From contig NC_042999.1 in the NCBI RefSeq assembly GCF_006345805.1, positions 132,494,001-132,558,000 on the forward strand: a DNA stretch of 64,000 bases, given 5' to 3'. The DNA is from Octopus sinensis (taxonomy: Eukaryota). Positions 18,283 through 38,593 of the stretch are shown one piece after another; positions within the stretch are counted from its first letter, which is position 1, and each line of letters starts with the position of its first letter. Under the pieces are notes generated by a model. That model was not told where the DNA came from. It made no database searches and worked only from the letters and a program-made list of their open reading frames with translations. The translations under genes and the position numbers were made by a program.

Positions 18283-19758
18283 TCAATAACACCTCAAACC
18301 ACAACAACTTCTATGGACTAGCCTAAAATCTATTTCTGACGTGGCATTGTTAAAATGCACAGTAACACAATTAAAGTTGTTACATGTAATTTTTTCACAA
18401 CCTATATCAAGGAAGCCAAAATATATGCAAGTATATTTTGAGGTACAAATCGACGCTGATGAATATTTTTTGTAATGAAGCATGCCCTTTTTCAGCGAAA
18501 TATAATTTGTATTAATATATGAACAGATTGGTCGCGGACTCAAGACACCATTATTACAAGTAACATTTCCGTTAGAATTTCTCGTGTAATTGGCGCGACA
18601 TGAATAAGTAATATTCGTATTTTGTGGAATTAAGCTACCAAACGGAAGATATTGCAAATTGTCTGAATAACGGTAGCTATATATGCCAAATTCGGGTAAC
18701 AGTTGACAGCTCTTCACACACCTTGGAAGTGTTCCATTCCAAGTTCCATTTTCTAAACAGGTCCTTTTAGAATCTCCCAACAATGTTTCTCCTGCTGAAC
18801 AGCTGTATTCAATAACTGAAGAATTATGTAACAAAATAAAGTTTAATCCACTTTGTGTCTCAATTGTACACGATTTTCTGCACTGCATGTCTGGGTACCA
18901 TTTACCTAACAAGCATTGAACGGCACCAAACGCAACTGGAATGAAAGATCGTTTGCAAGAATATATCACTTTTCTTCCTTCATTAATTAATGTTCTGGGT
19001 TTTAAAATTGTATCTTCAGAAATAGTCACCACTCTGCCAGCAATTTCTGGTACAAAGCATTTCAACGTGCAGACAGGTGTTGCAAAGTTCCATTCACCAT
19101 CTTGAAGACAAGTTAACACTGATTCACCTTTCAGGTTATATGGTTTTGAGCAACTGAAAGAAATGGTTTCGTTAATTTTAACTTCATTTGTATTGTTAAC
19201 ACTGCCATTTTTCGGTGGATGCGGTGGGAGACATTTTGTAGTTTCACAAACTGGTGGTAGAGACGTCCACTGCTGATTTTCTTGACAACGTATTGTAGTG
19301 TTTCCTCGCATAGAATAACCAGAAAAGCATGAGAAGTAAACAACAGAGTTATATGTGTATGCAACATTGGTTAAGATACTGTGAGCAGGTTTATGAAAAA
19401 TTGGGCAGGCTGTTAACTTACATTTTATATCTTGATACTTCCATTTACCATTCAGACAAACAACGTCAGTCGTATTCCGTTGGCTTGCTCGAAAATAGCG
19501 ATTGCACTTTTGTTCCAGATATATTTTTTGTTCTTCCCACTTTATGATATATTGTATTCTACCGTTGTGTAATTTTGGTAAAGGACCACAGTTTAAGAAA
19601 TTTATCACTTGTTTAAGAAGCCACGGAGAAATGATTTTATCTGATGCAGTGGTATTATCATATTCCGACAAAATATTTTGCATAATATTAAATGCATTAT
19701 TTTCACTTTTCACTGTGAATATAATTAAAGAAAGAAAATAGAAAGATCTGAATATCAT
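18283..19758 (-). CDS. Secreted six-sushi (CCP/SCR) protein with C-terminal 8-Cys domain, copy 1 (491 aa, intronless, intact)
   Basis: ATG start, hydrophobic N-terminus MIFRSFYFLSLIIFTVKS; six 4-Cys modules (aa 57-113, 118-171, 176-230, 234-293, 297-347, 351-412), with the Trp between Cys3 and Cys4 in the first five; many NxS/T sequons; no TM segment; terminal C-x5-C-x9-C-x4-C-x4-C-x20-CC-x3-C. Confidence 0.9.
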   Translation of the reverse strand: MIFRSFYFLSLIIFTVKSENNAFNIMQNILSEYDNTTASDKIISPWLLKQVINFLNCGPLPKLHNGRIQYIIKWEEQKIYLEQKCNRYFRASQRNTTDVVCLNGKWKYQDIKCKLTACPIFHKPAHSILTNVAYTYNSVVYFSCFSGYSMRGNTTIRCQENQQWTSLPPVCETTKCLPPHPPKNGSVNNTNEVKINETISFSCSKPYNLKGESVLTCLQDGEWNFATPVCTLKCFVPEIAGRVVTISEDTILKPRTLINEGRKVIYSCKRSFIPVAFGAVQCLLGKWYPDMQCRKSCTIETQSGLNFILLHNSSVIEYSCSAGETLLGDSKRTCLENGTWNGTLPRCVKSCQLLPEFGIYSYRYSDNLQYLPFGSLIPQNTNITYSCRANYTRNSNGNVTCNNGVLSPRPICSYINTNYISLKKGMLHYKKYSSASICTSKYTCIYFGFLDIGCEKITCNNFNCVTVHFNNATSEIDFRLVHRSCCGLRCY

Positions 19759-19896
19759 TTTCTGAATTTTGATGGTAAACTTTTCGTGAAAAATTTACAA
19801 AATTATTGTACTTAAAGTATAAGTGTTAGTGATTCTTTTACAGTCGAGATAGCAGGCAGTTCGTCGACTCCACAAGGAAAAAATAAGAAACATGAA

Positions 19897-19936
19897 TATT
19901 TATAGTAGGAGGGGTTTGAAGATTAGTTGATTGGCT
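19897..19936 (-). promoter_or_regulatory. Putative core promoter of copy 1 (CCAAT and TATA boxes)
   Basis: Minus strand AGCCAATCA (CCAAT at 19930-19934) and TATAAATA (19897-19904), ~140 bp upstream of the ATG; conserved in copy 2, TATA also in copy 3. Confidence 0.55.
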
Positions 19937-20289
19937 GTTTTAATTTGAATATTAAATGTGACTTAGGTTATAGTAGTAAAAAAATCATTGAATAGCAGTA
20001 AGCGTATTTACATAAATTACATGCATTGCATTAGATAAACACACACACACACACACCACACACACACACACACACGCACGCATACACACACACGCACGCA
20101 TACACACATACGCGCACACACATACACAGACACGCACGAACGCACACATACACACACATACTACATATGATGAAACATATGGCTTCGAAGTTTAAAATAT
20201 TAATATTCCCAGGGCAAATAGAATAAATGCACAATGCAAAGAAGATCGAGTGCACATGAATATCTGCAAGATAAAATCTGTAGATACAT

Positions 20290-20562
20290 TCTTCTATATT
20301 GTGCTGGTCTAAGAGAGGGTTTTGAGCGGTCGCAAGTTCACGGCGGCAGGAAAATCATTGGTGAGAATTCCTGTAGGCAGAATAATGGAAGTGCTTGACA
20401 TTATGTTTAGTGCTGGCTAGAAATGATGGACATAATTTGGTGACGAGAGGAAGCAAAATACGTAAATTGGAAGTGTTTGAGTGGACGTAAGACAAGGCGA
20501 TTACAAGACAAAGAAGGTGAGAGAGAAGAGAGAGAAGAGAAGGTACGGTGAGGAGAGAGAAC

Positions 20563-20594
<32 letters not shown>

Positions 20595-20605
20595 GATAGA
20601 GATAG

Positions 20606-20667
<62 letters not shown>

Positions 20668-21960
20668 TGTGTGAGAGGGTGATGTTGTCATATAACTCGT
20701 CCGTTAGTCAGCAGTTGAAAGAATTCTTTGATAAGCAACTTTGTGTGTCAGTGGGTTGATCATTTTCTTGGATGGTGTATACGGTGTACACCATTTACAC
20801 CGTCCCAAATCTATGAACAATACGATATTATGGCTTGCGCGTGTGCGTTGTACTGAGTTGTCAGGGTCTGCAAGACTCGTTTTTGGTGTGCTAATCTTTG
20901 GCTGCGTTAAAGATATACGCCTCCGGGAAAGGTTATCAATGACGTGATTGGCCTAGCAGATGAAGCCATGTTAAGAGTTTTAGTTCCATGTTCTCCGTTT
21001 TTGGTTTATAGTGTGCTATGTTGTTTCCCTGATGAATATTGTGATTTGGATATTGTGCTGGTTAAGGAGAAACGATATGGATGACAATATTAGAGAATGG
21101 TTTCGATGACTCGGTTCCTGGAGTCCGTGGAAAGTTAAACCTGACGTCATATGAATGACGTCTGGCTACAAAAGGTAAGGAAGAATAAAGGTTGTATATT
21201 AGTAGACGTCGTTGATAATTAGAAGAATGTTGAAAAGAAAACCGAAATTGGGTATGTCAAAATGATTATGAAATATGGGCGTGCGACGCCCATCAGCTCA
21301 CACCCGATGGTGAAATTTGATTCGTTTCTACCGCTCTAGAGTGAGGCAGCTAGAGGATGTACCGTTAGCGGAAGCAATTTTGCTTAGACTATTATCCAGT
21401 ATAATCAGGTGATTGAGTTAGCAGAAGGGTCAAATTTCCCTATTGGGTATTTGCAGATGGGTGTCTCTCGGCCATAGTTTACAAACTCTTGGACGCCTCC
21501 AGTTTCGGCTGTTGAGGAAACGATACAAAGAGATGAACTTGTCTCTATCTTTGTATCTATATGAAAGCATGTCCTGCGTGTACCTTTACTTGAAGGCATT
21601 GGTTATCATGCCGGTCTAGTGTCTTGCGACGCAATGCGGCTGTGTGTAGGTGGCTCAGAAGACTACATCACTTGAGAGGGCAGCTGGTATAGTTTCGGAA
21701 TTTACAATTTTGTGTTGGAGATTGCATGCTTGCGTCTACTCTAAACTACAATGGTAGAAGCTGTTGCAAACCACACTTGCATACATATGTCATGCTTGCA
21801 AGCATAATAAATACTAGAAGCATGAATTTATTGGTTTTTAATGCATTTGGTGTCGCTGGAATGTCGATCTTACTTTAGACACTCTATGTAATCCGCCTTG
21901 ACTAACAGCAGTGCAGGTTCCGGTTGCCGCTTTGAATTTCCAGCATCTCTTCATACAGTT
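20290..21960. repeat. Upstream flank block of copy 1 (decayed element with GIY-YIG-like motif and internal inverted duplication)
   Basis: Homologous to 11875-13550 and 27580-28570; consensus minus-strand reading RHYxGMxTNAFKERYTQH resembles a PLE GIY-YIG segment. Confidence 0.6.
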
Positions 21961-22229
21961 AAGTAAGCCCGTTACTGCAAGAAGTTATTGTGTGTGTGAA
22001 TGCGTTCATAAATTATAATTTTTATTACTCTCTCTCTATAAAAAAAAGGCATTATCATGTTCCCATCAGGTCTATAGATGTGATGAGAAAGTTATTTGAC
22101 ATACATGTCCAGGGCCGCAATGTGAGAACTTGTTATATATACATTTATAAAACATGCATGAAAAAAAATAATTACAGATAAAACATTAAAATAATAGAAT
22201 TATCATTATTTCTAAATCTCCCAAAGTTC

Positions 22230-23060
22230 TTTTAAGTAAAGGCTATTTGCCGACATAATGTGGTTGTGCAGGACAGTCACATTATGTTGGCAAATGTGAA
22301 GTCTGATGTTTTCCTTTTGATATGGCCAGTCCTCGTGTATATTTACTATTGGAAGGGACAAGTTTCGATTGACTCCAACTGAAGATACGTGCGCGGTCTC
22401 AGTTTATAAATTGTACGTTTATGTTGCGATGTCAATATTATTGGTAGAAGTTGAGCTGCTGGGTAAAACTTCTAGAGGAATGAAGGATAGTATCATTTGT
22501 ATAAGTGTTGAATGGAAGGACAAATAAGTCATATATGATAAGAAATAAGGGAGCAAGGGATACATTGAACTTTGGAGCACACCAGTATTGTTTGAGTGTG
22601 ATAGAGGAAGATCTTCGTTAACATGCAACGGAATGGCGCGATGTGATAAGAAGCTGCCAGAACCCAACGTCTAAGATTTGAGAAAGTACCGAAGCGTATA
22701 GACTAGAAGTTTCGAAATGAGACTCACGTACCAGAAAAAGTCTCAAGTTTTGCTAGTGTCAAGGCCAACGACATTGCCTTCTCAAATGGATTGTTGAACG
22801 ATAAATGAGTGTCGACCTGTCACCCTAGTGGAAACGGTCCTACAGAAGTGCCAGTGATTGTTGTTTGGCAACTGATGTAAGTTGATATCAGGATTAGTAA
22901 CCGAAACAGTTTGTCGCCGAAGTGATATTTTAACCATTTAAGAAAAACGGGAACTGTTAAGTTTAATGCGACGCAGGAGAATTGTAAAAGAAACGATGTC
23001 ACAGAAGCATAGAAGCATGACGAAAATCGTGGGAACTTTATAGCAGAGCATACAATAAAG
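22230..23060 (-). mobile_element. CR1/jockey-type LINE RT fragment paralogous to 15950-16920
   Basis: Colinear similarity including the shared end CAGAAGCATAGAAGCATGACGAAA. Confidence 0.7.
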
Positions 23061-23068
23061 ATATATAT

Positions 23069-23101
<33 letters not shown>

Positions 23102-23932: not shown

Positions 23933-23999
23933 TGCATGTATATGTATTGTATGTATGTATGTATGTATGTATGTATGTATGTATGTATGCATGTGTGTG

Positions 24000-24033
<34 letters not shown>

Positions 24034-24214
24034 TGTATGTCATTGTTCAGTTTTATTTCAAGATTTCTTGCCAACTGAGAAAGAACCGGTTTCAAGGTTC
24101 CTTCATTGGAATTTCAACATCAACAACATGATGTTTTTGTATGTATGTATGTATGTATGTATGTATGTATGTATGTATGTATGTATGTATGTATGTATGT
24201 ATGTATGTGTGTGT

Positions 24215-24252
<38 letters not shown>

Positions 24253-24319
24253 ATGCATGTGCAGATTTCTATGTTTCATGTATGTATTCTCATGCATATA
24301 GTTGCATATCTAGACATGC

Positions 24320-24975: not shown

Positions 24976-25741
24976 GTATGTATGTATGTATGCATGTATG
25001 TATGTATGTATGTATGTATGTATGTATGTATGTATACACACATATTTTCATCAAGTTCTATATAAATAAATATATTTATATCAAGTTCTATATAAAAACA
25101 ACCTGGCATTAAACTTAATAATTATTCAATACTTTATGGCACAATACGCGTCTGTTAAACATTTATAAAGATGTGTTTTACCTATAGTTTCGCATCCGTC
25201 ATATCTAGAGCAAGCAAGGCTTTTCTAACGAAACCATCGCCAGATTTATGTAATAATGTTTACTTCACACTCGTTGAATCTTAAATATGGTTCTATTCAC
25301 TTATAGTACACAGCAGAGTACATGCACATTGTTTCAAAATTACAAGCAACATTCATATATTATCACTTCTGCATGGTTGAATACTGTCAAAATTTATGGA
25401 TATGTATGTAATTAAAATAATAGTTTTCCAGCGATATACAGTGTGATAAAACGTGTGAGACTGAAGGTTCATATTCATGAAACAAAATAGAAACGCCAAC
25501 AACAGAATCAAGGGGAATATATGAAAGATTATTTTAATTTTAAAAATATGTCTTCAATTAGTGATGCCTTTTTAAAATAATCAGACACCTCGCGAAAATA
25601 CAAAATAAGATTGTTTCACTTATATTGTTATAGTTCTGTAGTTAAATATAGAATAGGCTCCATTCCATTTAAGACAAATTATGAATGTATATATATATCT
25701 TTTTGTATAAGAGATAGCTTCATGTTGGGAGTACTGTGATA

Positions 25742-27125
25742 TTAGTATGTATTACACTTCAAAGCGCAACAATCTCCAAAGTAATCCATAAAATTTATTT
25801 CTGACGTAGCATTGTCAAAATGCACAGTAACACAAAGTAGTTGCATGTTATCTCTTCACAACCTGCATCAAAGTAAACCAAAATATTTGCAAGAATAGTT
25901 CGCTGCACAAACAGACATTGGTGAATATTCTTCGTACTGAAGAATATTCTTTTTATTCAGCGATATATTTCTACATGAACAAATTGGATTGGGATTCAAG
26001 ACACCATTATTACAAGTAACATTTTCGTAAGAATTCCTCGGGTAATAACGGCGACATGAATAAGTAATTTGCGTAATTTGTAGAATTGAGCTGCCAAACG
26101 GAAGATATTGTAAAATGTGTGAATATCGGTAGCTATATATGCCAAATTCGGGTAACAGTTGACAGCTCTTTACACACCTTGGAAGTGTTCCACTCCATGT
26201 TCCATTTTCTAAACAGGTCCTTTTAGAATCTCCCAACAATGTTTCTCCTGCTGAACAGCTTTATTCGACAACTGAAGAAATACGTGACAAAATAAAATTT
26301 ATTTCACTTCGTGCCTCAATTGTACCCGATTTTCTGCACTGTATGACTGGGTACCATTTACCTGACAAGCATTGAACGATTCCAAACGCAACTGGAATGA
26401 AGGATCGGTTGCAAGAATATATCACTTTTCCTCCTTCATTGATTAATGTTCTGGATTTTAAAATTGTACCTTCAGAAATAATCACCACTCCGCCAACATT
26501 TTCCGGCACAAAACATTTCAACGTGCAGACAGGTATTGGAAAGTTCCATTCCGTCTTGAAGACAAGTTAATACTGAATCATCATTCAGATTATATGGTTT
26601 TGAGTAACTGGTTTCGTTAATTTAACTTCATTTGTATTGTTTATATTGCCAATTTTCAACGTGCAGACAGGTGTTGCAAAGTTCCATTCACCATCTTGAA
26701 GACAAGTTAACACTGATTCACCTTTCAGGTTATATGGTTTTGAGCAACTGAAAGAAATGGTTTCGTTAATTTTAACTTCATTTGTATTGTTAACACTGCC
26801 ATTTTTCGGTGGATGCGGTGGGAGACATTTTGTAGTTTCACAAACTGGTGGTAGAGACGTCCACTGCTGATTTCTTGACAACGTGTTGTAGTGTTTCCTC
26901 GCATATAATAACCATAAAAGCATGTGAAATGAACAACAGAGTTATATGTGTATGCAACATTGGTTAAGATACTGTGAGCAGGTTTATGAAAAATTGAGCA
27001 GGCTGTTAACTTATATTTTTTATCTTGATACCTCTATTTACCATTCTGACAAACGTTGGCTTGCTCGAAAATAGCGGTTGCATTTTTGTTCCAGACATAT
27101 TTTTTGTTCTTCCCATTTTACGATT
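25742..27125 (-). pseudogene. Sushi-array gene copy 2 (pseudogene)
   Basis: Colinear with copy 1 but lacks ~340 bp including ATG and signal peptide, has several frameshifts and a ~135-bp tandem duplication of the CCP3 end; terminal DCCALKCNTY* at 25742. Confidence 0.9.
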
Positions 27126-27220
27126 CTACAACTACATCTCAGAGAAATATTTTTCAGTTATATACTTACTTTGAAATCGAGGCTTATGACATTGCTTAGG
27201 GAGAGAATAAGAGAGATGGA

Positions 27221-27260
27221 TATTTATAGTAGGAGGGGTTTGAAGATTAGTTGATTGGCT
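27221..27260 (-). promoter_or_regulatory. CCAAT/TATA block upstream of copy 2
   Basis: TATTTATA at 27221-27228 and ATTGG at 27254-27258 on the plus strand, same spacing as copy 1. Confidence 0.5.
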
Positions 27261-27388
27261 ATTTTAATTTGAATAGTAAAATGTGGCTTATATTATAGCT
27301 GAACAGTAGAAGTAGTGTTGCACAGCAGTAAGCATGTTTGCATAAATTGCATGCATTAGATTGGACACACACACACACAACACACACA

Positions 27389-27433
<45 letters not shown>

Positions 27434-27579
27434 TAAACAAATACATACACTCACACACTCTACATTTGGTGAAACATAGGACCTGGATGATTAAAATATC
27501 AATATGACCAGGGGACATAGTATAAATCCACAGATTGCTGAGAAAATCTAGTGCGCATGACTATCTGTAGGATAAAATC

Positions 27580-27938
27580 TGTACGTATGTGTTTTTTATT
27601 GTGTTGGTTTGAAAGAAGTTTCTGAGCTTTTGCAAGTTCACAGCGACAGGAAAATCCTTGTTGAAAATTCCTGTAGGATGAGGAATAGAATAGCAGAGCA
27701 TAATGTTTAGTGTCGGTTAGAAATGATGGACATAATTTGGGTGATGAGGGGAAGCGAAATACATAAATCTGAAGTGTTTGAGTGGACGTAAGTCGAGACG
27801 AACCAACCAGGCCGTAATACAGGTCGATTAGAGGTGTATGGCTAGCTTTAGTTGCGTTTTATATAGAGAGAGGGGGTGGAGACATAGAGGGAGAGAGAGA
27901 GGAGCGTAGATGCAGAGAAACAGAGAGAGAGAATGAAT

Positions 27939-27988
<50 letters not shown>

Positions 27989-28570
27989 GAGAGAAACATG
28001 ATGGTGTGATACATCTCGTCCAGTCATCAGATTGGAAGAATTGTTTAGTGGACGTTTTTGGAGGTGACAGTAAATACGCCGTTGATGATTTACAGAAAGA
28101 ATGATGAAAAGCAAACCGAAACTGGGGGTGTCCAAGAGTTAATAATGTATGTTCGAGCGACACCCATCATCACACGCTCGATAGTGAAATTTGACACGAT
28201 TTTACCGCTCTACAGTAGCGTAACTAGATGATGTACCACCAGCGGGAGCACTTGTTCTTAAACTATTTTCTAGTACCCTCAGGTGACTGAGTTAGCCCAA
28301 GTGTCAAATTTCGTCATGTGTTGTGTGTGGATGGTTGTCTCTCGGCCATACTTTATAAACTTTTGGACACCCCTAATTTCGGCTGTAGAAGAAACTAGAC
28401 AAATAGATGGAATTGTCTCTTTCCATGCATCTAAGCGAATACATATGCTGCATGTACCATTCCTTGAAGGCATTGGTCATCATGCCCGTGTAGTGCCTTG
28501 GGATTCGATGAGATGGCGTGGGAGTGGGTCTTTGGAGTACTACAATTGAGAGGCAGAATCATCTTAGAGG
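27580..28570. repeat. Upstream flank block of copy 2
   Basis: Homologous to 20290-21700 with an internal deletion. Confidence 0.75.
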
Positions 28571-28787
28571 GCAGAGGGATAGCACAATTACATAGTACAT
28601 AGTAACACTGATCACATTTTTAATTCAATCAATTTATAACCACAACAAATTTCAATATAATCTGAATCTATAACTATATCTACATTATCTGAAGCGTATT
28701 TGTCGAAAATTCCATGCTCCTGAAAGTTATTAGGAAAGACATTCGTTGGGACACATATGTTAGCTTTAGCTAACCCATGCCGGTTAC

Positions 28788-28911
<124 letters not shown>

Positions 28912-29149: not shown

Positions 29150-29930
29150 TATATACTCTTTTACTCTTTTACTTGTTTCAGTCATTTGACTGCGGCCATG
29201 CTGGAGCACCGCCTTTAATCGAGCAACTCGACCCCGGGACTTATTCTTTGTAAGCGTAGTACTTATTCTATCGGTCTCTTTTGCCGAACCGCTAAGTGAC
29301 GGTGACATAAACAGTTTCCGTCTACCAAATCCACTCACAAGGCTTTGGTCGGCCCGAGGCTATAGTAGAAGACACTTGCCCAAGGTGCCACGCAGTGGGA
29401 CTGAACCCGGAACCATGTGGTTGGTAAACAAGCTACTAACCACACAGCCACTCCTGCGCCTATATATATACGAAGGAAAGAATAAATAGATTCAAAAGGA
29501 AGACAGAGAGCGATTCGACAGCTGTCTAATGACCCCTACACATGTTTCGATACAACGTAGATCCACATATATACAGGGTTTAAATTTGAATTAATTAATA
29601 GTTTACCTGTATAATAGGATTTAGTTGTATTTCCTCAGGTGATAAATAATCGGTGTCTCCGTAAATAAATGTCTAAATTAGATGCTATCACATCCAACTG
29701 GCTCCTCAGTTTCAAGCCGGTCGGTCTGAGCTTGCCGCTAATACGTTCTTAACGGAATACACTTTAACTATATATATTCCTTTACTCTTTTACTTGTTTC
29801 AGTCATTTGACTGTGGCCATGCTGGAGCACCGCCTTTAGTCGAGCAAATCGACCCCAGGACTTATTCTTTGTAAGCAATGTTAGGGGGACAAACACAGAC
29901 ACACAAAGATACACACACACACATACATAT

Positions 29931-30008
<78 letters not shown>

Positions 30009-30170
30009 GACGGGCTTCTTTCAGCTTCCGTCTATCAAATTCACTCACAAGGCTTTGGTCGGCCCGAGGCTATAGTAGAAGACATTTACCCAAGGTGCCA
30101 CGCAGTGGGACTGAACCCGGAACCATGTGGTTGGTAAGCAAGCTACTTACCACACAGCCACTCCTACGCC
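29150..30170 (-). mobile_element. Two SINE family B copies (29150-29460 and 29775-30170)
   Basis: Reverse complements of 9611-9995. Confidence 0.9.
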
Positions 30171-30306
30171 TATATATATAATATTTAACATTATAGTCGA
30201 TTTCGATATAATCATATTTAATAATAGAGTTTATTATAAGTAAAATTATTATATTATATATATTATTTATATCTTAAAAATATTGATTATATTTTAGATA
30301 TTTAAA

Positions 30307-30373
30307 CCACCTGATGAATGACTGCGACTCAAAAATTTGAAGAAGTTAGCAGGCATGAAACGATCGTAGTGTG
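30307..30373 (+). ncRNA. Type I hammerhead ribozyme motif with extended stem II
   Basis: CCAC-CTGATGA-ATG...CAT-GAAA-C-GATC-GTA-GTG; same family as 44221-44263, with similar downstream AT-rich sequence. Confidence 0.65.
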
Positions 30374-30510
30374 ATATTAATTATATTTTTTAATAATTTT
30401 GTTATATACTTAAATAATATAAATATAATAATCTTATGTATTGGCTTAAGTTTTTCATTGTTTGATTTGCCTAATAGTGGTTTTGTCTCTAATTTAATAT
30501 AATATAATAT

Positions 30511-30543
<33 letters not shown>

Positions 30544-30556
30544 GTATATATTTATG

Positions 30557-30591
<35 letters not shown>

Positions 30592-30624
30592 ATGTATATA
30601 TATATATATGTATATAAAGGGAAA

Positions 30625-30860
30625 GTTTACGAAAATAAACAAAAGACGAAGGCAGGTGGTGCACAAACAAACAGATGTATTAGTATAGCGCACAGGAATA
30701 GAAAAAGTATTTTAGGTTTCGAGCCTACGCTCTTCTACAGAAAGGTACACAGAAAAAACAAAGAGAGAAACAAGGAGAGAAAAAAATGTGTGTAGTAGCT
30801 AACGATCTATCATGGCATCTGACTCGAATGGTCAGACAGGAAGGGGAAAGTAGGGGAGAT
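30625..30860 (-). mobile_element. Penelope-like terminal repeat fragment with variant hammerhead at 30709-30744
   Basis: Reverse complement similar to 43520-43715 and 15100-15260. Confidence 0.6.
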
Positions 30861-31360
30861 AACAAGGTCAAGATGATATATATATATATACGTATACATA
30901 CATACATACATACATACATACATACATACATACATACATACACACACATATATATATATATATATTTATATATGAATGATTCAATAAATTATGTTTAATA
31001 ATGTTTAAAAAAAAACACCATTATCATGTTTTCGTTGGGCTTACAAATGTCAAATTATTTGACATACATGTACAGAATCGCGATGTGAGTCCTTGTTATG
31101 TAAAACATGCATAAACAAAAAATTGCAGACAAAGCCTAAGAATAATGCTGCTGAAGAAAAAATGCAGAAATTTCGACGATATTTGTAAGAATATTTTCTT
31201 ATTCTTAAAACTAATCTATATTTTTATATAGTCTGCATATCACAGACGATGGAATTAAATAGATAAAACCAGTATGCAAACACAAAATACAAGCAGAATG
31301 TGAAAACTATTGATATGTGTAATTATAATTGTGTATATATATATATATATAATGTATATG

Positions 31361-32020
31361 TAGGTGGTCTGATCAATAAGTAACTGGACTGTTGCCATAG
31401 TAGCGAAGCTAATGTACGCAGAGTAAAGCCGCTTGCTACAGATTAACCTTGACGTTTGTTGCGCATGCGCAGTAAGTTTTAACGTTCTAGCTCACATATG
31501 CTGTTTACAGTAGTGCTTGGAAGGAAGGTCTGTAGCGTGTGTCCCTTGCATTGACTATGACAGAGAAAGTTGAGCAGAATATTTGCATCAAAGTTTACCA
31601 AAGTTTATGGAAGTTGTCCAGAGGCCTACACAAAGTTTTCAAAAAGTGTTCATGGCTCAATCAAGGAGATCTTGTACAGCTGAAACTCTAGTGTCTTTCT
31701 TGTCAGCTGAAAACAGTTTGGGCACAAACTTGGCAGACATGCGTCTCATACACAAATCTTCAGTGATAATGGACTGAACTGAACCATAACTAATTTGCAC
31801 ATCTTCTGATAACTCACGGATGGTGATTTGAATAATTCCCCTCACAGCTTCATGCACATCTGCAATGTTTTTCTCAGTTCTGCAGGTTGCTGGTCGCCCA
31901 AAACGTTCGTCCATCTTAGAAAGTCGGAATTACTCGTACACTTCTGTGTGGCTCATACATTCCTCTCCATACACTTTCTGTAACTTTGCGTCGGCCTCTG
32001 AGCATGTATCACCATGACAA
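31361..32020. mobile_element. Mariner 5' half with an internal inversion
   Basis: TIR-like GGTCTGATCAATAAGTAACTGGACT near 31365; MTEKVEQNICIK on plus at 31557; continuation GRPATCRTE...MRRMSAKFVPK on minus at 31657-31914. Confidence 0.8.
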
Positions 32021-32749
32021 CTTTATATATACATAGATGTATATATATATTTAAGGGTTACACTACTTTTCCTATATTCCGGGACTGGAGAAATAGGTAC
32101 TGCACACATCATTCGCAGGTTCGTAACTCTGATGAGATAGAAATCGTTAATTGTTCTTGATGTTTTAAGCCAACACTTTCAGGAGAAACATGGAGAGGGA
32201 GGGAATTTCAGAGGTGTATCATCTGCGAAGGAAGGACTAGGTGTAGCAGGTTATTGCGAATCCTGAGGGGTTTGGACACACCACAACATGAAATAGAAGA
32301 AGATGAGAGACATACAGATTGGTAGTGCTTGAGGTGAGTTGGCATGAGACCAGCCAGCAACGAGGAACTGAGCCCATTATATTGGTGGCCGAAAAAACAC
32401 TGTTATGCCAGTCAGTCATGTAGCTTTCTCTTGGTACGGTTTAGAATGTTTCTGGTGCAATTGTGAGACATCTAGCAGTTTGCTGTTCATGTTTCAAATG
32501 TATGAAGTGCGATGTTTTTCTTTTGATATGATCAATCCTCGTGTATATTTACTATTGACTCCAATAGAGGAAATATGCGCAGTCACAGTTCATAGGTCAT
32601 TGTATGTTTCTTTTGCAGTGTTATTATTACTGGCCAATGATGCGTAGCCGGGGAAAATTGTTGAGGAAGGAAGAATAGTAATGTGCGCATAAGAGTTAAA
32701 CATCATACTTTTACAATAGAATTGTTGAAGGCGGACTGGCCAGCCGGAA

Positions 32750-32813
32750 AATGTGTATACAACATTTATTAAAATACTGTGAGCAGGTTTATAAAAAATT
32801 TGGCAGGTTGTGA
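32750..32813 (-). pseudogene. Relic of a fourth sushi-array gene (start of CCP2)
   Basis: Minus strand reads TTCQIFYKPAHSILINVVYT versus copy 1 TACPIFHKPAHSILTNVAYT; lies just beyond the same LINE-containing downstream block. Confidence 0.7.
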
Positions 32814-33118
32814 AGATAGTGTAAAATTACGTCGAACAAATTAAGAAATTGGTCAAATCCTGTGTACGATCTGCTGAGGTCATTAGAAATAAAGGATTGT
32901 ACACATCTTAATATATTGACGTGGATTGTAAAAATTTCTGGCAAAATTTTGAATTCTTGAATTTTACGGTATATGTTCTCTAATTTAGTCGATTTTGTAT
33001 TTTCAAATAAATATTTTTTCTATTATAAATTATTTAGTTATTAAGCACTTCTTACACATTTTATTGTAAATAATGAACATACTTTAAAGTATATACAGTA
33101 AAAATTTAAAGAAGAATG

Positions 33119-33445
33119 TTACGATCGTGAAGGGGAATCACAATGACCTTTTGTATGCACAATTTGTGATAGACCATGCCTTTCTTTTACTGGGCTCAAA
33201 TCCACTAAAAAAGAACTTTCACTAACTATTCTGTCTATATGTCTGTGTACACTTTTCAATGCCATGTATACCATAAGGTCTGCAAGTCTAACGGAGATCC
33301 ACAAAAGACATTTTAAGATCCACAAAGATCAGAACTTAACTGCAGCTCTTGGTGGTCCAGATCGGATATGCAATCTATGTGGGTATCTTCAAAACATTGC
33401 CTGGTTTAAAAACCACATCAAACGCCATGATGGATCTAAGGTGTA
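33119..33445 (+). other. Degenerate C2H2-type zinc-finger-like fragments, probably a LINE C-terminus
   Basis: FVCTICDRPCLSFTGLKS and ICNLCGYLQNIAWFKNHIKRH in broken frames. Confidence 0.35.
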
Positions 33446-33485
33446 AGTACAGGTGATCAGATTCTGCATAAAGAGGAGACAATCA

Positions 33486-33564
<79 letters not shown>

Positions 33565-33572
33565 ATATATAT

Positions 33573-33619
<47 letters not shown>

Positions 33620-34189
33620 TGGTGTGTGTGTATGTGCGAATGTGTGCATATGTACATACATTACATACATACATATGTGTGAGTGTGTATGTATAATCCC
33701 CACCCACACCGATCTATATACATCCATACATACATATACATTTCGTAGATATTCGGTGAAAGATACAGAAAAAAATACTCCGAAGTTATGTATGTATGTA
33801 TGTATGTATGTATTTATGTATGTATGTATGTATGTATGTATGTATGTATGTATGTATGTATGTATGTATCTATCTATCTATCCATTTGTCTGTCTATCTG
33901 TCTGTCTATCTGTCAATTTTGCTTCCTGGGTTTGGGAGAAGTGCAATAATAATAACCTTTGCACCCCTCCGGGACCGGTGTGATTCAGGCTATCAGTGTT
34001 CCACTTAAGATACTGCAGGGTAACACTTATCCGAAAGACATGAAATAGGATGCGGAGCGAGCCGCTTTCCAGATAACTGATATTCCGAAAGGCAAGACTG
34101 GGAAAAAAATTATTCGAACGGGGTCTGCAGTATAGATGATGAAAGAATGAGGAGGAAGAAGAAGGGGAGGAAAGGAAAAAAAGTAGGTC

Positions 34190-34680
34190 GAGGATGTCTT
34201 GTGGGGGGAAAAGACATGAACAAGGAGTGAATTCAGTGGTGTGTAATTGCTATTAAACGAGTCAAGATTTGCATGTATGCAGAGTGTGGGTTACGAATGG
34301 TTGGGGAAGATTACTTAAGTATTGAAAGGTAGCATCATTTTCATAAGGGTGAGTGTTTCTGGAACTGGCGCCCTGCAGGTAAATGGTGCATAAACGTGAT
34401 TAGGGGATAAAACATAACCTTGGGGCATGCCAGAGTCAATAAAATTGGGGAAAGGAACAGCTGAGCCAATACATGAGGCGATAGTGCAATATAATAGCGA
34501 GCTGTCAATTTAAGAGACGCGAGACAGGTGGGACTCGTAGACAAATATTTCGATAGAGATTCGCATGCACAAACACGGTCGAAAGTTTTGTTGATGTTGA
34601 TGATAAGGGACAAAATAGTGGTTTCCTTAAATTTCTCCAAGGTAAGAGCCCGCCAATGGGTTACTGAAAAGGTTACCTGC
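34190..34680 (-). mobile_element. Deleted CR1/jockey-type LINE fragment
   Basis: ININKTFDRVC (DISKAFDRVW-like) joined directly to a segment resembling the C-terminal SLFYRYY region. Confidence 0.45.
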
Positions 34681-35429
34681 TTATCTGGTTGAACCGAGAC
34701 TGTACTGGTGATCGTAAAGAGAGAATGAAAGAGAAAAAGAGAGGGATGGGGAGGGGTAAAGACAGAGGAAGAAATAGAGATGAAGAAACAGAGAGGGAGA
34801 AAGAGAAAGTGAGAGAGAGAGGGGGGTTAATGAGTCCAGAGAGTAAAGAGGCTATGTCTATTGAGCAATGTTTGAGGGAAATGTAAACTACTCTGATGGC
34901 CTTGTTAATTCGAAGTGACCAATGGTGCTTCCGTACTTGGCATGTGTGTACAGAAGGTGGTGATTGTAAAAGGGAGGGAGGCGAAAGAAATGGCGGTGAG
35001 TTGCCATATATGTTCGGTGTTGAGTTGGATGACATGTGGGCAGCGGAAGTGGTAATCTTTTTAGCAAGGTACCAAAAGGACGCAGTCTTTGGAGACTAAA
35101 AATACGGTTAAATCTTAATGGTTAGGACTAAAAGAAAGAAGAGAGAAAGAAAATTCTTGTTTGATGCAATTAATAAACAGATCTTCAATAATCAGTTTAT
35201 TGAACAGCTGAACGACAAGCATAACAGTAAGATAATACAATCTGACATCCTTGAATTTAACACTTCTGTTAATGAAACCTTTTGCAAATGAGCCGCAATG
35301 TAGTAATAACATCACCAGTTTGGATACAGATGTCATGATGAATGGTAGAAAATCTCTAGGATCAGTAGTTGCGAAGCTAGGATGGCGGTTGGTAGCGATG
35401 TGGATGACCCGTAGCAATGGTGATAGTCA

Positions 35430-36500
35430 ACCACGTGCGAGGGTCTGTGTGTAAGTCTGAATAGGGAGTAAGGATATATTTTGGCAAACTCGAGAGCTGT
35501 TCTTGTCGGCATGCAACACTGTAGATCGGTGCCTTCAGGTCAAAATTTAACATCGGATATATATTGATGGGCGTCTCTTTGACATACGCTATAAAATTTT
35601 GGACAACCATAATTTCGATTTTACTTTCAACATTCTTCTTCCAGAACAACATTGGTGTAATTGCTGCCAATTCCAACAACTTCCACTACAATACAAGCTT
35701 TATTCCTCTTAAATCTTTCCCTGTCTGACATCATTCATATGCAATGTAAAAACCTCACGCCAAACTTGCATTAACTCCATAAACAGAGACATAGAAACCA
35801 TTCTTTAATGTTGTCAAAATCACTTCAAATAATTTCGTAAAATACACACTAAACATGAAGGACAAAGCTAATAGTTTCAACTACTCGGCCATTCACATCA
35901 CTGAGAATCTCTCTCAGGGAAAGTAATCTTTGGTATAGTCAAAATTACATCACTAAGATTGGCCCGCTGGTAAAGAAAATCTTTCAGACCCTAACAAGGG
36001 CCTAACTACTTACAAGGCACAACTGAAAGCCATAATGTAATATTGTCTCTGCAGATAAGACGGTGTTGATAGCGTGCATACGAAATTACAAGATCACTTC
36101 CAAGAAGATGATCAACCGACTGACCATCGTGACATTCTTCAAACCACTGACAAACGAACACGAGGTGTAACTCCGTCTCTCTACCTTCACGTTCCTCTCA
36201 CTCTCTCTCCCTCCCACTCCCTCTCTCCCCCTCTCTCTCACGCGACTACAGTGAGCTTTACTTCTTTGACTTGCTTGCCTTCTTTACAGTCTGGCTTGTT
36301 GATCTCGTTCTGCCTCCACTCAGGAACTCCCGACCCATGTATTTTGCTTCCTCTCATCACCCAAATTATGTCTACCATTCATACACGGCACTAAACATTA
36401 TGCTGAGTCATTCCTTTAGTCAGCCTAAAAAAAGTGTGGACAATATTTCTCCTATCGCCGTCAACTTGCGACCACTCAGTGCTATCTATCAGATCAATAA
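35430..36500. repeat. Inverted, more diverged upstream flank block of copy 3
   Basis: Reverse-complement similarity to 20290-21400 (e.g. TCATCACCCAAATTATGTC versus GACATAATTTGGGTGATGA). Confidence 0.7.
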
Positions 36501-36890
36501 AGTAACAAACATGTATGAAATTTACTCAATTTACTCAACTTTACACATACAGAGTTTTCATCTTGTGGTAATTTATGCGTACTTGATTTTCTCTGCATTC
36601 TGTGCATTTATTTTATTTGCCCTGTGCACATTAATATTTTTAATTTTCAAACCATATGTTTCAACATATGTAGTGTGTGTGTGTGTATGTGTGTGTGTGT
36701 GTGTGTGTGTTTATGTGTGTGTGTGTGTGTTGTGTGTGTGTGTGTGTGTGTGTAGCTAATTCAACTATGTAATTTATGCAAATACGCTTACTACTGTACT
36801 ACATGACTTGTGCTGTTCTGCTATAATCTAAGCCACATCATAATATTAAAATTAAAATAACCAGCCAGCAAATCTTTAAGCCCCACCTCT

Positions 36891-36898
36891 TATAAATA
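36891..36898 (+). promoter_or_regulatory. Putative TATA box of copy 3
   Basis: TATAAATA in the position homologous to copies 1 and 2; the CCAAT position is altered (CCAGCCAGCA). Confidence 0.45.
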
Positions 36899-37109
36899 TT
36901 CTCTCCCTAAGCAATACCATATGCCTTAATTTTAAAATTAAAGAAGTGTATATACGAAAATATTTTTCTAAGATACACTTGTGGAATCGACCAACTGCCT
37001 ACTAATTCGACTGTAAAGGACTTACTGAAAATATAAAACTAACAGCTATTCAATCGGCAATATAGTTTTGTAAATTTTTCACGTAAAGTTTACCATCAAA
37101 ATTCAGAAA

Positions 37110-38593
37110 ATGATATGCAGATCTTTCTATTTACTTTTTTTAATCATATTCACTGTGAAAAGTGAAAATAATGCATTTAATAGTATTGTGCAAAATATTT
37201 TGTCGGAATATAGTAATACAAGTTCAATCGACAAAAACTTTACTCCTTGGTTTTTTAAACAAATGATAGATTTCTTAAACTGTAGCCCTTTACCGGAATT
37301 AAACAACAGTAGAATACAATATATCATAAAATGGGAAGAACAAAAGATATCTCTGGAACAAAAATGCAACCGATATTTTGAAGCAAGCCGAGGCAATACG
37401 ACCGAGATTGTTTGTCGGAATGGTAAATGGAAGTATCAAGATATAAAATGTAAGTTAACAGCCTGCCCAATTTTTCATAAACCCGCTAATAGTTTCATGA
37501 CAAATGTTGCATATACATATAACTCTGTTGTTTACTTCTCATGCTTTTCTGGTTATTTTATGCGAGGAAACACTACAATACGTTGTCAAGAAAATAAACA
37601 GTGGACGTCTCTCCCACCAGTTTGTGAAACTACAAAATGTCTGCCACCGCATCCACCCAAATATGGCAGTGTTAACAATACAAATGAGGTTGAAATCTAC
37701 GGATCAATTTATTTCTTTTGTTCAAAACCATATAATCTGAAAGGTGAATCAGTGTTAACTTGTCTTCAAGACGGTCGTTGGAATTTTCCAACACCTGTAT
37801 GCACTTTGAATTGTGTTGTGCCTGAAATTGCTGGCAGAGTGGTGAATATTTCTGAAGGTACAATTTTAAAACCAAGAACCTTAATCAATGAAGGAGGAAA
37901 AGTGATATATTCTTGCAAACGATCTTTCATTCCTGTCGCGTATGGATTCGTTCGATGCTTTTCAGGTAAATGGTACCCAAACCTACAGTGCAGAAAAAGG
38001 TGTAAAATTGAAAAACTACATGGATTAAATTTTATTTTGTCACATAATTTTTCAGTTATTGAATATAGCTGTCCAGCAGAAGGAACTTTGTTCGGAGATT
38101 CTAAAAGAACCTGTTTAGAAAACGGACATGGAGTGGAAAACTTCCAGTTTGTGTTAAGAATTGCCAACTGTTACCTGAGATTGGTTTATATAGCTACCGA
38201 AATGAAGAAACGCAGCGATATCTTCCGTTTGGCAGCAGAGTCCCAGAAAATACGACAATTACCTATTCATGTCACTTTAATTATTCGAAGAACTCTAACA
38301 AGAGTGTGACGTGTACTAACGGTATTTTGACACCAAAACCAAGCTGTTACTATAAGAATAAAGTATACGTGAATAGAGCTAATACCCTTATGTTCAGAGA
38401 TACATCATCAATGCGTGTTTGTGGCGGAAATATTACTTGCAAATTTTTTGGGTACGGTGACGGATTTTGTAAATGGATAACGTGTAACGACTTGTTTCAT
38501 TGTGTTAGTGTACGTTTGAATAATGAAACATCTGAAGTATCTTTTGTGCCTTACTTTGGAACATGTTGCGGTTTGGCGTGCCATAAATCGTAA
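37110..38593 (+). pseudogene. Sushi-array gene copy 3, full length except one 1-bp deletion at ~38126 (recent pseudogene or assembly error)
   Basis: Frame 1 matches copy 1 up to CLENG; restoring one A (GGACA to GGAACA) gives TWSGKLPVC...CQLLPEIGLYSY...PKPSC...CCGLACHKS* with no further stop. Confidence 0.88.

What the first reader, a model, noticed from the sequence alone, without database searches (positions are those of the whole stretch)
18283..38593. Birth-and-death array of secreted six-sushi proteins
One intact, one decayed, one nearly intact inverted copy and one relic lie within about 20 kb, each with homologous flanks. The architecture (signal peptide, 6 CCP, novel Cys domain, heavily glycosylated, no membrane anchor) matches no named protein I recognise. 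Known: CCP arrays act in complement regulation, pathogen recognition and adhesion, and a sushi module occurs in the cuttlefish toxin SE-cephalotoxin. Inference: a lineage-specific secreted family under rapid turnover (immune, venom-gland or reproductive role). Strongest candidate for an undescribed system here.
Basis: partly seen in the sequence, partly recalled or inferred. Interest (0 to 1): 0.75.

Follow-up and report, generated by a model that had tools for sequence, protein, structure and literature searches.

The report
Octopus-only secreted six-sushi gene cluster
This stretch of an Octopus sinensis chromosome carries a tandem cluster of one working gene, two broken copies and two remnants. 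The gene belongs to a family found only in octopods. It encodes a secreted protein with six sushi domains and a fast-evolving tail domain that has no relatives elsewhere, and sister genes' products occur in octopus skin mucus. This is a real and moderately interesting lineage-specific family, not a new kind of system.

Summary
The window is Octopus sinensis CM016861.1:132494001-132558000. It contains:
- an intact single-exon gene, 18283-19758(-), 491 aa;
- a badly decayed copy at 25592-27124(-);
- a 64-nt relic at 32751-32814;
- an inverted copy at 37110-38592(+), broken by a single 1-bp deletion;

The protein has a signal peptide, six CCP modules and a 79-aa tail domain with eight cysteines. 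It has 13 N-glycosylation sequons and no membrane anchor.

The family was found only in octopods (Octopus sinensis, O. bimaculoides, O. vulgaris, Argonauta hians). Every complete member examined has a single coding exon. RefSeq holds them only under automatic names (factor H-like, P-selectin-like, SVEP1), and I found no dedicated study.

The cluster layout is shared with O. bimaculoides, so the copies are not uncollapsed haplotypes. Copy 1 is under purifying selection against its orthologue (CCP dN/dS 0.33). The tail domain has no relative among 1.84 billion representative proteins and evolves with pN/pS of about 2.5-3 (p = 0.001-0.006).

Two O. vulgaris skin-mucus proteomes list paralogues, not copy 1 itself.

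My best reading is a secreted surface or humoral binding protein with a conserved CCP stalk and a diversifying tail. The function is inferred, not shown.

The parts
18283..19758 (-). Copy 1: intact single-exon coding sequence, 491 aa plus a TGA stop. It corresponds to RefSeq XP_036357238.1, whose model wrongly removes aa 114-214.
   Evidence: ORF list. Pfam Sushi at 124 bits. 100% identity to O. sinensis locus L002. dN/dS 0.44 against its O. bimaculoides orthologue L009, and 0.33 in the CCP region.
19705..19758 (-). Signal peptide, aa 1-18 (MIFRSFYFLSLIIFTVKS|ENN)
   Evidence: Read from the sequence. The hydrophobic N-terminus and the TVKSENN motif are conserved across the family. No dedicated signal-peptide predictor was available.
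18523..19590 (-). Six CCP/sushi modules, aa 57-412 (57-113, 118-171, 176-230, 234-293, 297-347, 351-412)
   Evidence: Four cysteines per module. Modules 1-5 have the conserved Trp; module 6 lacks it (sequence). AlphaFold2 pLDDT is 70-87 for modules 1, 2, 3, 5 and 6, and below 50 for module 4. Foldseek and HMM matches are to factor H, CR1/CR2, CD46 and beta2-glycoprotein I.
18286..18522 (-). C-terminal orphan domain, aa 413-491, eight cysteines (C-x5-C-x2-FG-x6-C-x4-C-x4-C-x20-CC-x3-C)
   Evidence: No Pfam family reaches its cut-off. The domain profile finds only the family itself among 1.84 billion representative proteins. Mean pairwise identity is 35% against 62-79% for the CCPs. Pooled pN/pS is 2.5-3.1, p = 0.001-0.006. 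AlphaFold2 confidence is low.
19876..19960 (-). Conserved core-promoter block of copy 1: CCAAT at 19930-19934 and TATAAATA at 19897-19904, the latter starting 146 nt upstream of the ATG
   Evidence: Alignment of the upstream regions of copies 1, 2 and 3 with the O. bimaculoides orthologue of copy 3. Motif positions. Promoter function is inferred.
17673..23079 (-). Duplication unit A: copy 1 with its homologous downstream flank (17673-18127) and upstream flanks (19876-21959, 22295-23079)
   Evidence: Self-blastn
25016..28574 (-). Duplication unit B, containing pseudogene copy 2 (25592-27124). It has many stops and frameshifts, has lost aa 1-70, and carries a 154-bp internal duplication. TATA remnant at 27221-27228.
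   Evidence: O. bimaculoides also has a decayed copy at the matching position, with different lesions (L001 5354-6135).
26654..26873 (-). A 220-nt patch in copy 2 that is 100% identical to copy 1 (19060-19279), while the rest of the two copies is 83-93% identical. Likely an ectopic gene-conversion tract.
   Evidence: the repeat finder family D5. Blast junction.
32751..32814 (-). Relic: a 64-nt fragment of the CCP2 coding region
   Evidence: 87.5% nt identity to 19353-19416, E 1.6e-14. tblastn E 1e-4. It lies in a 6.5-kb stretch (28574-35088) that has no counterpart in O. bimaculoides locus L001.
37110..38592 (+). Copy 3: an inverted, nearly intact copy. Its only lesion is a 1-bp deletion at 38125/38126 (GGAAC to GG-AC). 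It is the orthologue of the intact O. bimaculoides gene XP_014773178.1.
   Evidence: Its promoter has CCAGC where the other copies have CCAAT.
36171..39223 (+). Duplication unit C: copy 3 with its flanks, inverted relative to units A and B
   Evidence: Self-blastn. 89% nt identity and collinear with O. bimaculoides L001 9045-12113.
11858..16934 (-). Gene-less fifth unit. Homologues of the upstream flanks are present (11858-13546 and 16150-16934) but no coding sequence. LINE reverse-transcriptase remnants lie where the gene is expected.

Best explanation
Shown:
- The region is part of a tandem cluster on Octopus sinensis chromosome CM016861.1. The cluster extends at least 62 kb beyond the window.
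- The family was found only in octopods, and each complete member examined has a single coding exon.
- The cluster changes by local duplication, inversion, ectopic gene conversion and pseudogenisation.
- Copy 1 (18283-19758, minus strand) is a constrained gene with a conserved CCAAT/TATA block upstream.
- It encodes a signal peptide, a 38-aa linker, six CCP modules and a 79-aa eight-cysteine tail domain with no detectable relatives outside the family.

Inferred mechanism: the protein is secreted as an elongated, N-glycosylated chain of domains into skin mucus or haemolymph, where it acts as a soluble binding protein. The conserved CCP stalk, above all CCP4-5, would hold a conserved partner belonging to the animal itself or to the mucus. 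The tail keeps its cysteine scaffold while changing amino acids faster than silent sites, so it would be the variable ligand-binding end. The most likely setting is surface defence or recognition. Gain and loss of copies would change the set of tail variants available.
For: Origin and extent:
- The window matches O. sinensis L002 at 100% identity.
- Two further intact paralogues lie 41-62 kb upstream.
- The cluster is shared with O. bimaculoides.

Family limits:
- Only octopod hits, then a drop in score from 646 to 85 bits.
- No relatives in the viral contig collection.
- Single coding exon in Octopus and Argonauta.

Architecture.

Constraint on copy 1: dS 0.15, overall dN/dS 0.44, and 0.33 in the CCPs, against its orthologue.

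Promoter block: conserved among copies 1-3 and the O. bimaculoides orthologue of copy 3.

Tail domain:
- It is an orphan.
- It keeps invariant cysteines and an FG motif.
- Its ratio of replacement to silent changes exceeds that of the CCPs (Fisher p = 3e-7 pooled).
- pN/pS is 2.5 (p = 0.0014), or 3.1 (p = 0.002-0.006) using intact genes only.

Secretion in vivo, for paralogues:
- A0A6P7TXA6 is listed in O. vulgaris skin mucus (PMC10138644 supplement).
- Peptide QWSSLPPICEIVK is assigned to the A0A6P7S884 protein group in a second skin-mucus data set. That group also holds ORFs from a paralarval transcriptome (PMC11431876 supplement).

Birth and death: intact, frameshifted, decayed and relic copies, plus species-specific young duplicates.
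Against: - There are no expression or protein data for the window's own copy. An exact-sequence look-up found nothing.
- The mucus evidence is thin. It is one peptide per study, shared among paralogues, and the peptide sequence does not match copy 1.
- No binding partner is known.
- The selection test is a simple Nei-Gojobori count on 24-79 codons per pair. It is not a likelihood site model, and relaxed constraint on the loops with conserved cysteines would look similar.
- AlphaFold2 gives no usable model of the tail (pLDDT 28-52), and Foldseek finds nothing for it.
- The signal peptide and glycosylation are read from the sequence only.
Confidence: 0.5

Rival explanations
1. True complement regulator. 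The CCP chain binds the octopus C3/TEP-type opsonin and controls its deposition, as factor H, CD46 or the poxviral complement-control proteins do. The tail would tether the protein to the animal's own surfaces.
For: The closest sequence and fold matches are CR1, CR2, factor H, CD46, Crry and SPICE. The protein is a soluble chain of CCPs. C3-like genes are known in cephalopods (my own knowledge, not tested here).
Against: The matches are generic CCP similarity, at 16-28% identity. The family was found only in octopods whereas C3 is ancient, so this cannot be the ancestral regulator. A fast-evolving, multi-copy tail is not what a regulator tethering to the animal's own surfaces would be expected to show. 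The automatic names differ from paralogue to paralogue (factor H, P-selectin, SVEP1, CSMD3, factor C).
Confidence: 0.15
2. Chemical-communication or reproductive protein. It would be a secreted cue in skin mucus, or a gamete or egg-coat protein, whose rapid tail evolution reflects recognition between individuals or between the sexes rather than of pathogens.
For: Positive selection together with tandem turnover is typical of reproductive and recognition proteins. Paralogues are present on the skin surface. The family is octopod-specific.
Against: There are no data from gonad, oviducal gland or sperm. Paralogue ORFs occur in a transcriptome of paralarvae, which are sexually immature. No receptor is known.
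Confidence: 0.12
3. Salivary (venom) component, as the reader suggested by analogy with the sushi module in SE-cephalotoxin.
For: The protein is secreted, cysteine-rich, multi-copy and fast-evolving. These traits are shared with many venom families.
Against: No salivary data were examined. The only tissue evidence is skin mucus and paralarvae. The family is absent from the ink proteome. No hit from squids or cuttlefish appeared in any protein search. The toxin itself was deliberately not fetched for comparison.
Confidence: 0.05
4. Nothing functional in this window. Copy 1 is an unexpressed leftover of a decaying array, and only paralogues elsewhere are in use.
For: Three of the five units in the window are dead, and a fourth carries a frameshift. 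RefSeq models copy 1 with an odd internal intron. The exact protein is not on record in any assembly.
Against: The 491-codon ORF is intact. CCP dN/dS is 0.33 against the O. bimaculoides orthologue at dS 0.15, with 44 replacement and 34 silent changes. The CCAAT/TATA block is conserved.
Confidence: 0.08
5. Assembly artefact: the copies are uncollapsed haplotypes or mis-joined pieces.
For: The 1-bp deletion in copy 3 and the 220-nt identical patch could each be assembly errors. Two paralogues upstream of the window differ by a dS of only 0.01.
Against: Copies 1 and 3 differ by dS 0.40 and are inverted relative to each other. Copy 2 has many independent lesions. The independently assembled O. bimaculoides genome has the same neighbouring arrangement of a decayed copy next to the copy 3 orthologue.
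Confidence: 0.02

Closest known systems
Vertebrate regulators of complement activation (factor H, CR1/CR2, CD46, CD55, Crry) and the poxviral complement-control proteins VCP/SPICE
   Same: Chains of CCP modules. These are the best sequence and fold matches. Factor H and the viral proteins are soluble, and the viral ones also have a single coding exon.
   Different: Identity is only 16-28%, and there is no orthology because the family was found only in octopods. This family adds a 38-aa N-terminal segment and an orphan eight-cysteine tail. All its complete members examined have a single coding exon, whereas RCA genes have about one exon per module (my own knowledge). C3b binding was not tested.
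Beta2-glycoprotein I (apolipoprotein H)
   Same: A soluble, heavily N-glycosylated plasma protein made of a short CCP chain with a specialised binding end. Among the top Foldseek hits.
   Different: It has five CCPs, and its binding end is a modified fifth CCP rather than a separate cysteine-rich domain. It is a single-copy vertebrate gene. No homology beyond the CCP fold.
Invertebrate secreted CCP-chain proteins with an added small cysteine-rich domain, such as C. elegans LEV-9 (CCPs plus a WAP domain). Named from my own knowledge.
   Same: The general design: a secreted CCP chain combined with a small disulfide-rich module.
   Different: Pfam finds no WAP or any other family in the tail, and no homologues outside octopods. 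The functional setting is unrelated.
Tandemly duplicated, diversifying invertebrate immune-type families, such as snail FREPs and sea-urchin 185/333 (Trf). Named from my own knowledge.
   Same: Lineage-restricted, clustered, secreted, and fast-evolving in the presumed recognition part.
   Different: The domains are unrelated. There is no evidence here of somatic diversification, of induction by infection or of pathogen binding.
RefSeq/UniProt automatic entries: XP_036357238.1 'complement factor H-like', XP_029634395.1 'complement factor H', XP_014773178.1 'SVEP1', XP_014777951.2 'P-selectin'
   Same: These are the same genes, or their paralogues and orthologues.
   Different: The names come from generic CCP similarity and contradict one another. 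The model for copy 1 drops 101 residues. I found no dedicated study.

Membership tests
CCP / sushi / SCR module superfamily (Pfam PF00084) | A module of about 60 aa with four cysteines and a conserved Trp, scoring above Pfam's gathering threshold | tested here: met
   124 bits against a cut-off of 20.7. Six four-cysteine modules are present; modules 1-5 have the Trp and module 6 lacks it. Module 4 taken alone matches Sushi only at E 0.09.
CCP / sushi / SCR module superfamily (Pfam PF00084) | Small beta-sandwich fold arranged in a chain | tested here: met
   AlphaFold2 gives beta modules with pLDDT 70-87 for five of the six. Foldseek E-values are 1e-19 to 1e-9 against factor H, beta2-glycoprotein I and CD46.
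Regulators of complement activation (factor H / CD46 type) | Extracellular part built of CCPs only | tested here: not met
   There is a 38-aa N-terminal segment and a 79-aa non-CCP tail.
Regulators of complement activation (factor H / CD46 type) | Orthology with the vertebrate RCA genes | tested here: not met
   Only octopod relatives were found. The next hit is a generic Lingula sushi protein at 85 bits.
Regulators of complement activation (factor H / CD46 type) | Binds C3b/C4b, with decay-accelerating or cofactor activity | not testable with these tools
   Needs recombinant protein and octopus C3/TEP.
Selectins (the automatic name 'P-selectin') | C-type lectin domain, EGF domain, CCPs and a transmembrane anchor | tested here: not met
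   Pfam finds Sushi only. There is no hydrophobic segment after the signal peptide.
SVEP1 / CSMD (automatic names) | VWA, EGF and pentraxin domains, or CUB domains, alongside the CCPs | tested here: not met
   Pfam finds Sushi only in copy 1 and copy 3, and precomputed Pfam lists only Sushi for the complete homologues.
Beta2-glycoprotein I | Five CCPs, the fifth modified with an extra disulfide and a lysine-rich loop | tested here: not met
   Six CCPs plus a separate eight-cysteine domain. The similarity is limited to the CCP fold.
SE-cephalotoxin-type cephalopod salivary toxins | Sequence homology and salivary-gland expression | not tested
   The toxin was not fetched. No squid or cuttlefish protein appeared in any search. 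No salivary data were examined.
Multigene family evolving by birth and death | Tandem paralogues with pseudogenes among them | tested here: met
   One intact, one frameshifted, one decayed, one relic and one gene-less unit.
Multigene family evolving by birth and death | Paralogues group by orthology across species, with lineage-specific gains and losses, rather than being homogenised within a species | tested here: met
   In the tree, copy 1 pairs with O. bimaculoides P0002 and copy 3 with P0003. There are species-specific young duplicates. Only one short gene-conversion patch was seen.
Retrogene-derived family | Intron-free coding region together with an identifiable multi-exon parent gene or poly(A)/target-site traces | tested here: inconclusive
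   The coding sequence is a single exon in all nine complete genes and one partial gene examined. No parent gene or insertion traces were found. The event would predate the split between Octopus and Argonauta.

The most novel reading that the evidence does not exclude
The family is an octopod invention for recognition at the body surface. Each member would be a germline-encoded secreted protein with a constant CCP stalk and a positively selected, structurally new eight-cysteine tail, and tandem gene gain and loss would keep changing the set of tails. That would be a new class of diversified invertebrate recognition molecule. A bolder and much less likely version (a few percent at most) is that it supplies the still-unidentified skin cue that stops octopus suckers from gripping the animal's own arms.
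Probability: 0.2. Interest if true: 0.65.

Novelty: new variant of a known kind. Interest (0 to 1): 0.42.

Why it matters
Very little is known at the molecular level about cephalopod immunity or the biology of the octopus body surface. This family gives a concrete set of candidates to work on. It was found only in octopods and is secreted, and its paralogues have been detected in skin mucus. It also has a clear split between a conserved stalk and a diversifying orphan domain.

The work also corrects misleading database names. 'Factor H', 'P-selectin' and 'SVEP1' are already being repeated in proteomics papers as evidence for complement regulation. It flags a faulty RefSeq model for copy 1. The O. 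vulgaris annotation also appears to lack most of the family, since only one O. vulgaris model, a fusion, turned up in the searches.

If the selection signal holds up, the tail would be a new small disulfide-rich fold worth solving.

Tried and rejected
- Structure of the tail. AlphaFold2 on the whole protein and on the tail alone gave pLDDT 28-52, and Foldseek found nothing at or below E 1e-3. No fold can be assigned.
- Pfam on the tail and on the N-terminal segment gave only sub-threshold chance hits (AZUL, PhoLip_ATPase_N).
- The profile search with the tail gave two marginal hits, P0027 and P0028 (E 7e-4). Both are unrelated repeat proteins that match a short 'C-x-(Y/L)-FG-(W/F)' stretch, so I rejected them.
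- Viral origin of the single-exon gene. No relative was found in IMG/VR.
- Exact-sequence look-ups of copy 1 (491 aa) and of copy 3's truncated ORF (399 aa) in public assemblies found nothing. This gave no independent check of expression or of the frameshift.
- The RefSeq 'intron' inside copy 1. The donor GTAAGT is simply the codons for K-C-K-L, and the acceptor CAG is missing in most paralogues. I treat it as a cryptic site pair or an annotation artefact, not a conserved splice.
- The haemocyte marker 'svep1' in an O. vulgaris brain cell atlas is LOC115222969. I could not link it to this family.
- The ink proteome has no family member.
- Rfam and tRNA scans of the window found nothing.
- Literature searches by accession number, locus name and keywords found no dedicated study.
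- One attempt to read the 2015 octopus genome paper failed because it is not held.

Full report
**Where the window comes from.** The 491-aa ORF at 18283-19758(-) is identical, wherever the two align, to RefSeq XP_036357238.1 of Octopus sinensis. The locus fetched for that protein matches window 8283-29758 at 100% identity. The window is therefore CM016861.1:132494001-132558000 of assembly GCA_006345805.1. Outside the array it holds only transposon remnants and microsatellites. There are no Rfam families or tRNAs.

**Checking the observation.** A tblastn search of the ORF against the window finds four places:
- copy 1, intact;
- copy 2 at 25754-27124(-), spread over three reading frames with many stops, its first 70 codons lost and a 154-bp internal duplication;
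- a relic at 32751-32814, which is 64 nt of CCP2 coding sequence at 87.5% identity, E 1.6e-14;
- copy 3 at 37110-38592(+).

Aligning copy 3 with copy 1 and with its O. bimaculoides orthologue shows a single lesion, a 1-bp deletion at 38125/38126. Every other indel is a multiple of three. Its stop codon is at 38590-38592.

Self-blastn shows that the duplicated units include 0.5 kb downstream and 2-3 kb upstream of the gene. Unit A is 17673-23079, unit B is 25016-28574, and unit C is 36171-39158, inverted. A fifth unit keeps only the upstream-flank homologues (11858-13546 and 16150-16934), with LINE remnants where the gene should be. The relic's surroundings are only weakly similar to the other units and not collinear with them. 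They sit in a 6.5-kb stretch that O. bimaculoides lacks. The description is confirmed, with one unit added.

**Architecture.**
- Pfam finds only Sushi, at 124 bits.
- The sequence has 32 cysteines, 24 of them in six four-cysteine modules at aa 57-412 and eight in the last 79 residues.
- There are 13 N-X-S/T sequons and a hydrophobic N-terminus ending in TVKS|ENN.
- There is no later hydrophobic stretch and no C-terminal tail suited to a GPI anchor.
- AlphaFold2 models CCP1, 2, 3, 5 and 6 with pLDDT 70-87. CCP4 and the tail fall below 50.
- CCP4 is divergent by sequence (Sushi E 0.09), yet with CCP5 it is among the most conserved parts of the family.
- Foldseek and PDB profile matches are to factor H, CR1/CR2, CD46, Crry, beta2-glycoprotein I and the poxviral regulators, at 16-28% identity. 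None of these matches covers the tail.

**The family.** A single-sequence search and a profile search of 5.8 billion proteins return only octopod proteins of 483-495 aa. These come from O. sinensis, O. bimaculoides and Argonauta hians, plus one fused O. vulgaris model. In the profile search the score then drops from 646 to 85 bits. The automatic names disagree with one another: factor H-like, P-selectin-like, SVEP1, CSMD3-like, clotting factor C.

Every complete member whose locus I fetched has a single coding exon, including the two Argonauta genes; so does the partial P0002 model over the part its contig covers. A distance tree shows two old lineages. One lies on another chromosome (P0008/P0018 with Argonauta P0011). 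The other has Argonauta P0010 as sister to the expanded Octopus cluster. Within that cluster, copy 1 pairs with O. bimaculoides P0002 and copy 3 with P0003.

The cluster reaches beyond the window. Two intact paralogues lie 41-62 kb upstream and differ from each other by a dS of only 0.01. Three O. bimaculoides members are spread over about 290 kb. No relative exists in the viral contig collection. A single-exon gene for six CCPs suggests an old retroposition event, but I found no parent gene or insertion traces.

**Not haplotypes, and truly birth and death.**
- dS between copies 1 and 3 is 0.40, against 0.14-0.15 between orthologues of the two Octopus species.
- The two copies are inverted relative to each other.
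- The independently assembled O. bimaculoides genome has the same neighbouring pair, a decayed copy next to the copy 3 orthologue.
- Fates differ by lineage. Copy 3 is intact in O. bimaculoides and frameshifted here, and here its promoter CCAAT also reads CCAGC. Copy 2 is dead in both species but with different lesions. Each species has its own young duplicates.
- A 220-nt patch is 100% identical between copy 1 and pseudogene copy 2, against a background of 83-93%. It ends at copy 2's internal duplication, which points to one ectopic gene-conversion event.

**Is copy 1 a working gene?** Against its O. bimaculoides orthologue (L009, 91% nt identity), dS is 0.15 and dN/dS is 0.44 overall and 0.33 in the CCPs, with 44 replacement and 34 silent changes. 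Upstream, copies 1, 2 and 3 and the O. bimaculoides orthologue of copy 3 share a block containing CCAAT and TATAAATA. In copy 1 the TATA box starts 146 nt before the ATG. This fits the 134-nt leader of paralogue transcripts reported in a proteomics supplement. The RefSeq model removes an in-frame 303-nt GT-AG 'intron' from the ORF. The donor is just the K-C-K-L codons and the acceptor is not conserved, so I regard it as an artefact or a cryptic splice. No expression data exist for copy 1 itself.

**The tail domain.**
- No Pfam family reaches its threshold.
- A profile of nine tails, searched against 1.84 billion representative proteins, finds only the family itself plus two spurious repeat proteins.
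- Five cysteines and an FG pair are invariant across the nine aligned tails, while mean pairwise identity is 35% against 62-79% for the CCPs.
- In three phylogenetically independent close pairs, the tail has 82.5 replacement and 8.5 silent differences. That gives pN/pS 2.5, one-sided Fisher p = 0.0014.
- Using only intact genes, pN/pS is 3.1, p = 0.002-0.006.
- The CCPs give 0.47, and the contrast between tail and CCPs has p = 3e-7.
- These are simple counts on short segments. They suggest diversifying selection but do not replace likelihood models.
- No reliable fold could be predicted.

**Evidence of secretion.** The supplement of one O. vulgaris skin-mucus proteome lists A0A6P7TXA6 (XP_029654565.1, a paralogue) with what I read as one peptide, and the paper discusses it as 'complement factor H-like' (PMC10138644). 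A second, TMT-labelled skin-mucus study reports the peptide QWSSLPPICEIVK. It is assigned to a protein group made up of family members, including the paralogue just upstream of the window, together with ORFs from a paralarval transcriptome (PMC11431876). Copy 1 reads QWTSLPPVCETTK at that position, so the peptide does not come from it. The family is absent from an ink proteome. I found no paper that treats the family as such.

**Interpretation.** The following are shown:
- a constrained, promoter-bearing, single-exon gene for a secreted six-CCP protein with an orphan tail;
- a family found only in octopods;
- a cluster that changes by duplication, inversion, gene conversion and decay.

The mechanism is inferred. 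I propose a soluble glycoprotein of mucus or haemolymph whose conserved stalk, above all CCP4-5, binds a constant partner and whose diversifying tail binds variable targets, most plausibly in surface defence. Rival readings are a genuine regulator of C3/TEP, a communication or reproductive protein, a salivary toxin, or an unexpressed leftover. Each is weighed in its own section of this report, and none is excluded by experiment.

**Verdict.** The finding is real and correctly read. It is not a new kind of system. It is a lineage-specific variant of the secreted CCP-chain design with a new terminal domain, already present in databases under misleading automatic names. No step had to be referred.

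Noticed in passing
window 19119-19421 (-), inside copy 1: RefSeq XP_036357238.1 splices out an in-frame 303-nt GTAAGT...CAG segment (aa 114-214) from an uninterrupted, conserved ORF. The donor is simply the K-C-K-L codons, and the acceptor CAG is absent from most paralogues. This is probably an annotation artefact or a cryptic splice.
   Followed up: yes
window 19060-19279 and 26654-26873: The two copies are 100% identical over 220 nt, although copy 1 and pseudogene copy 2 are otherwise 83-93% alike. The patch ends at a 154-bp internal duplication in copy 2. It looks like an ectopic gene-conversion tract, though an assembly error is not excluded.
   Followed up: partly
window 17245-17579, 23941-24260, 33787-33881, 40744-41286: Long (TATG/TGTA)n tetranucleotide arrays sit at or near the edges of the duplication units. 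They may have served as substrates for unequal exchange. This was not tested.
   Followed up: no
window 28574-35088: This 6.5-kb stretch between units B and C holds the relic and has no counterpart in the orthologous O. bimaculoides locus L001. It is either an insertion in O. sinensis or a deletion in O. bimaculoides.
   Followed up: partly
window 36857-36865 (+), promoter of copy 3: The CCAAT box conserved in copies 1 and 2 and in the O. bimaculoides orthologue reads CCAGC in O. sinensis copy 3. That fits real loss of function better than a mere sequencing error at the frameshift.
   Followed up: partly
L003:3505-4992 and 10001-11485 (O. sinensis, 41-62 kb upstream of the window): Two intact paralogues 6.5 kb apart differ by a dS of only 0.01. 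This is a very recent tandem duplication, gene conversion or an assembly duplication.
   Followed up: no
window 5094-6422 (-): An intact 442-aa ORF with a CCHC-type motif and a basic, proline-rich tail, with no Pfam match. It looks like a retroelement gag-type protein.
   Followed up: partly
window 11049-11513, 47793-48314, 54045-54458, 56269-57108: Transposon remnants: zf-RVT and RVT_1 fragments of LINE-type reverse transcriptases, and a DDE_3 (Tc1/mariner-type) transposase fragment.
   Followed up: yes
window 14001-16000, 42001-44000, 50001-52000: Strongly strand-skewed low-complexity tracts, with GC skew of -0.40 to -0.60. The third is a long CT-rich run that reads as poly-(FLS) in translation.
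   Followed up: no
O. vulgaris protein CAI9716043.1 (P0020): The only O. vulgaris model in the family is a 787-aa fusion of sushi modules with arrestin domains. The single-exon family therefore seems to be largely missing or mis-modelled in that annotation.
   Followed up: partly
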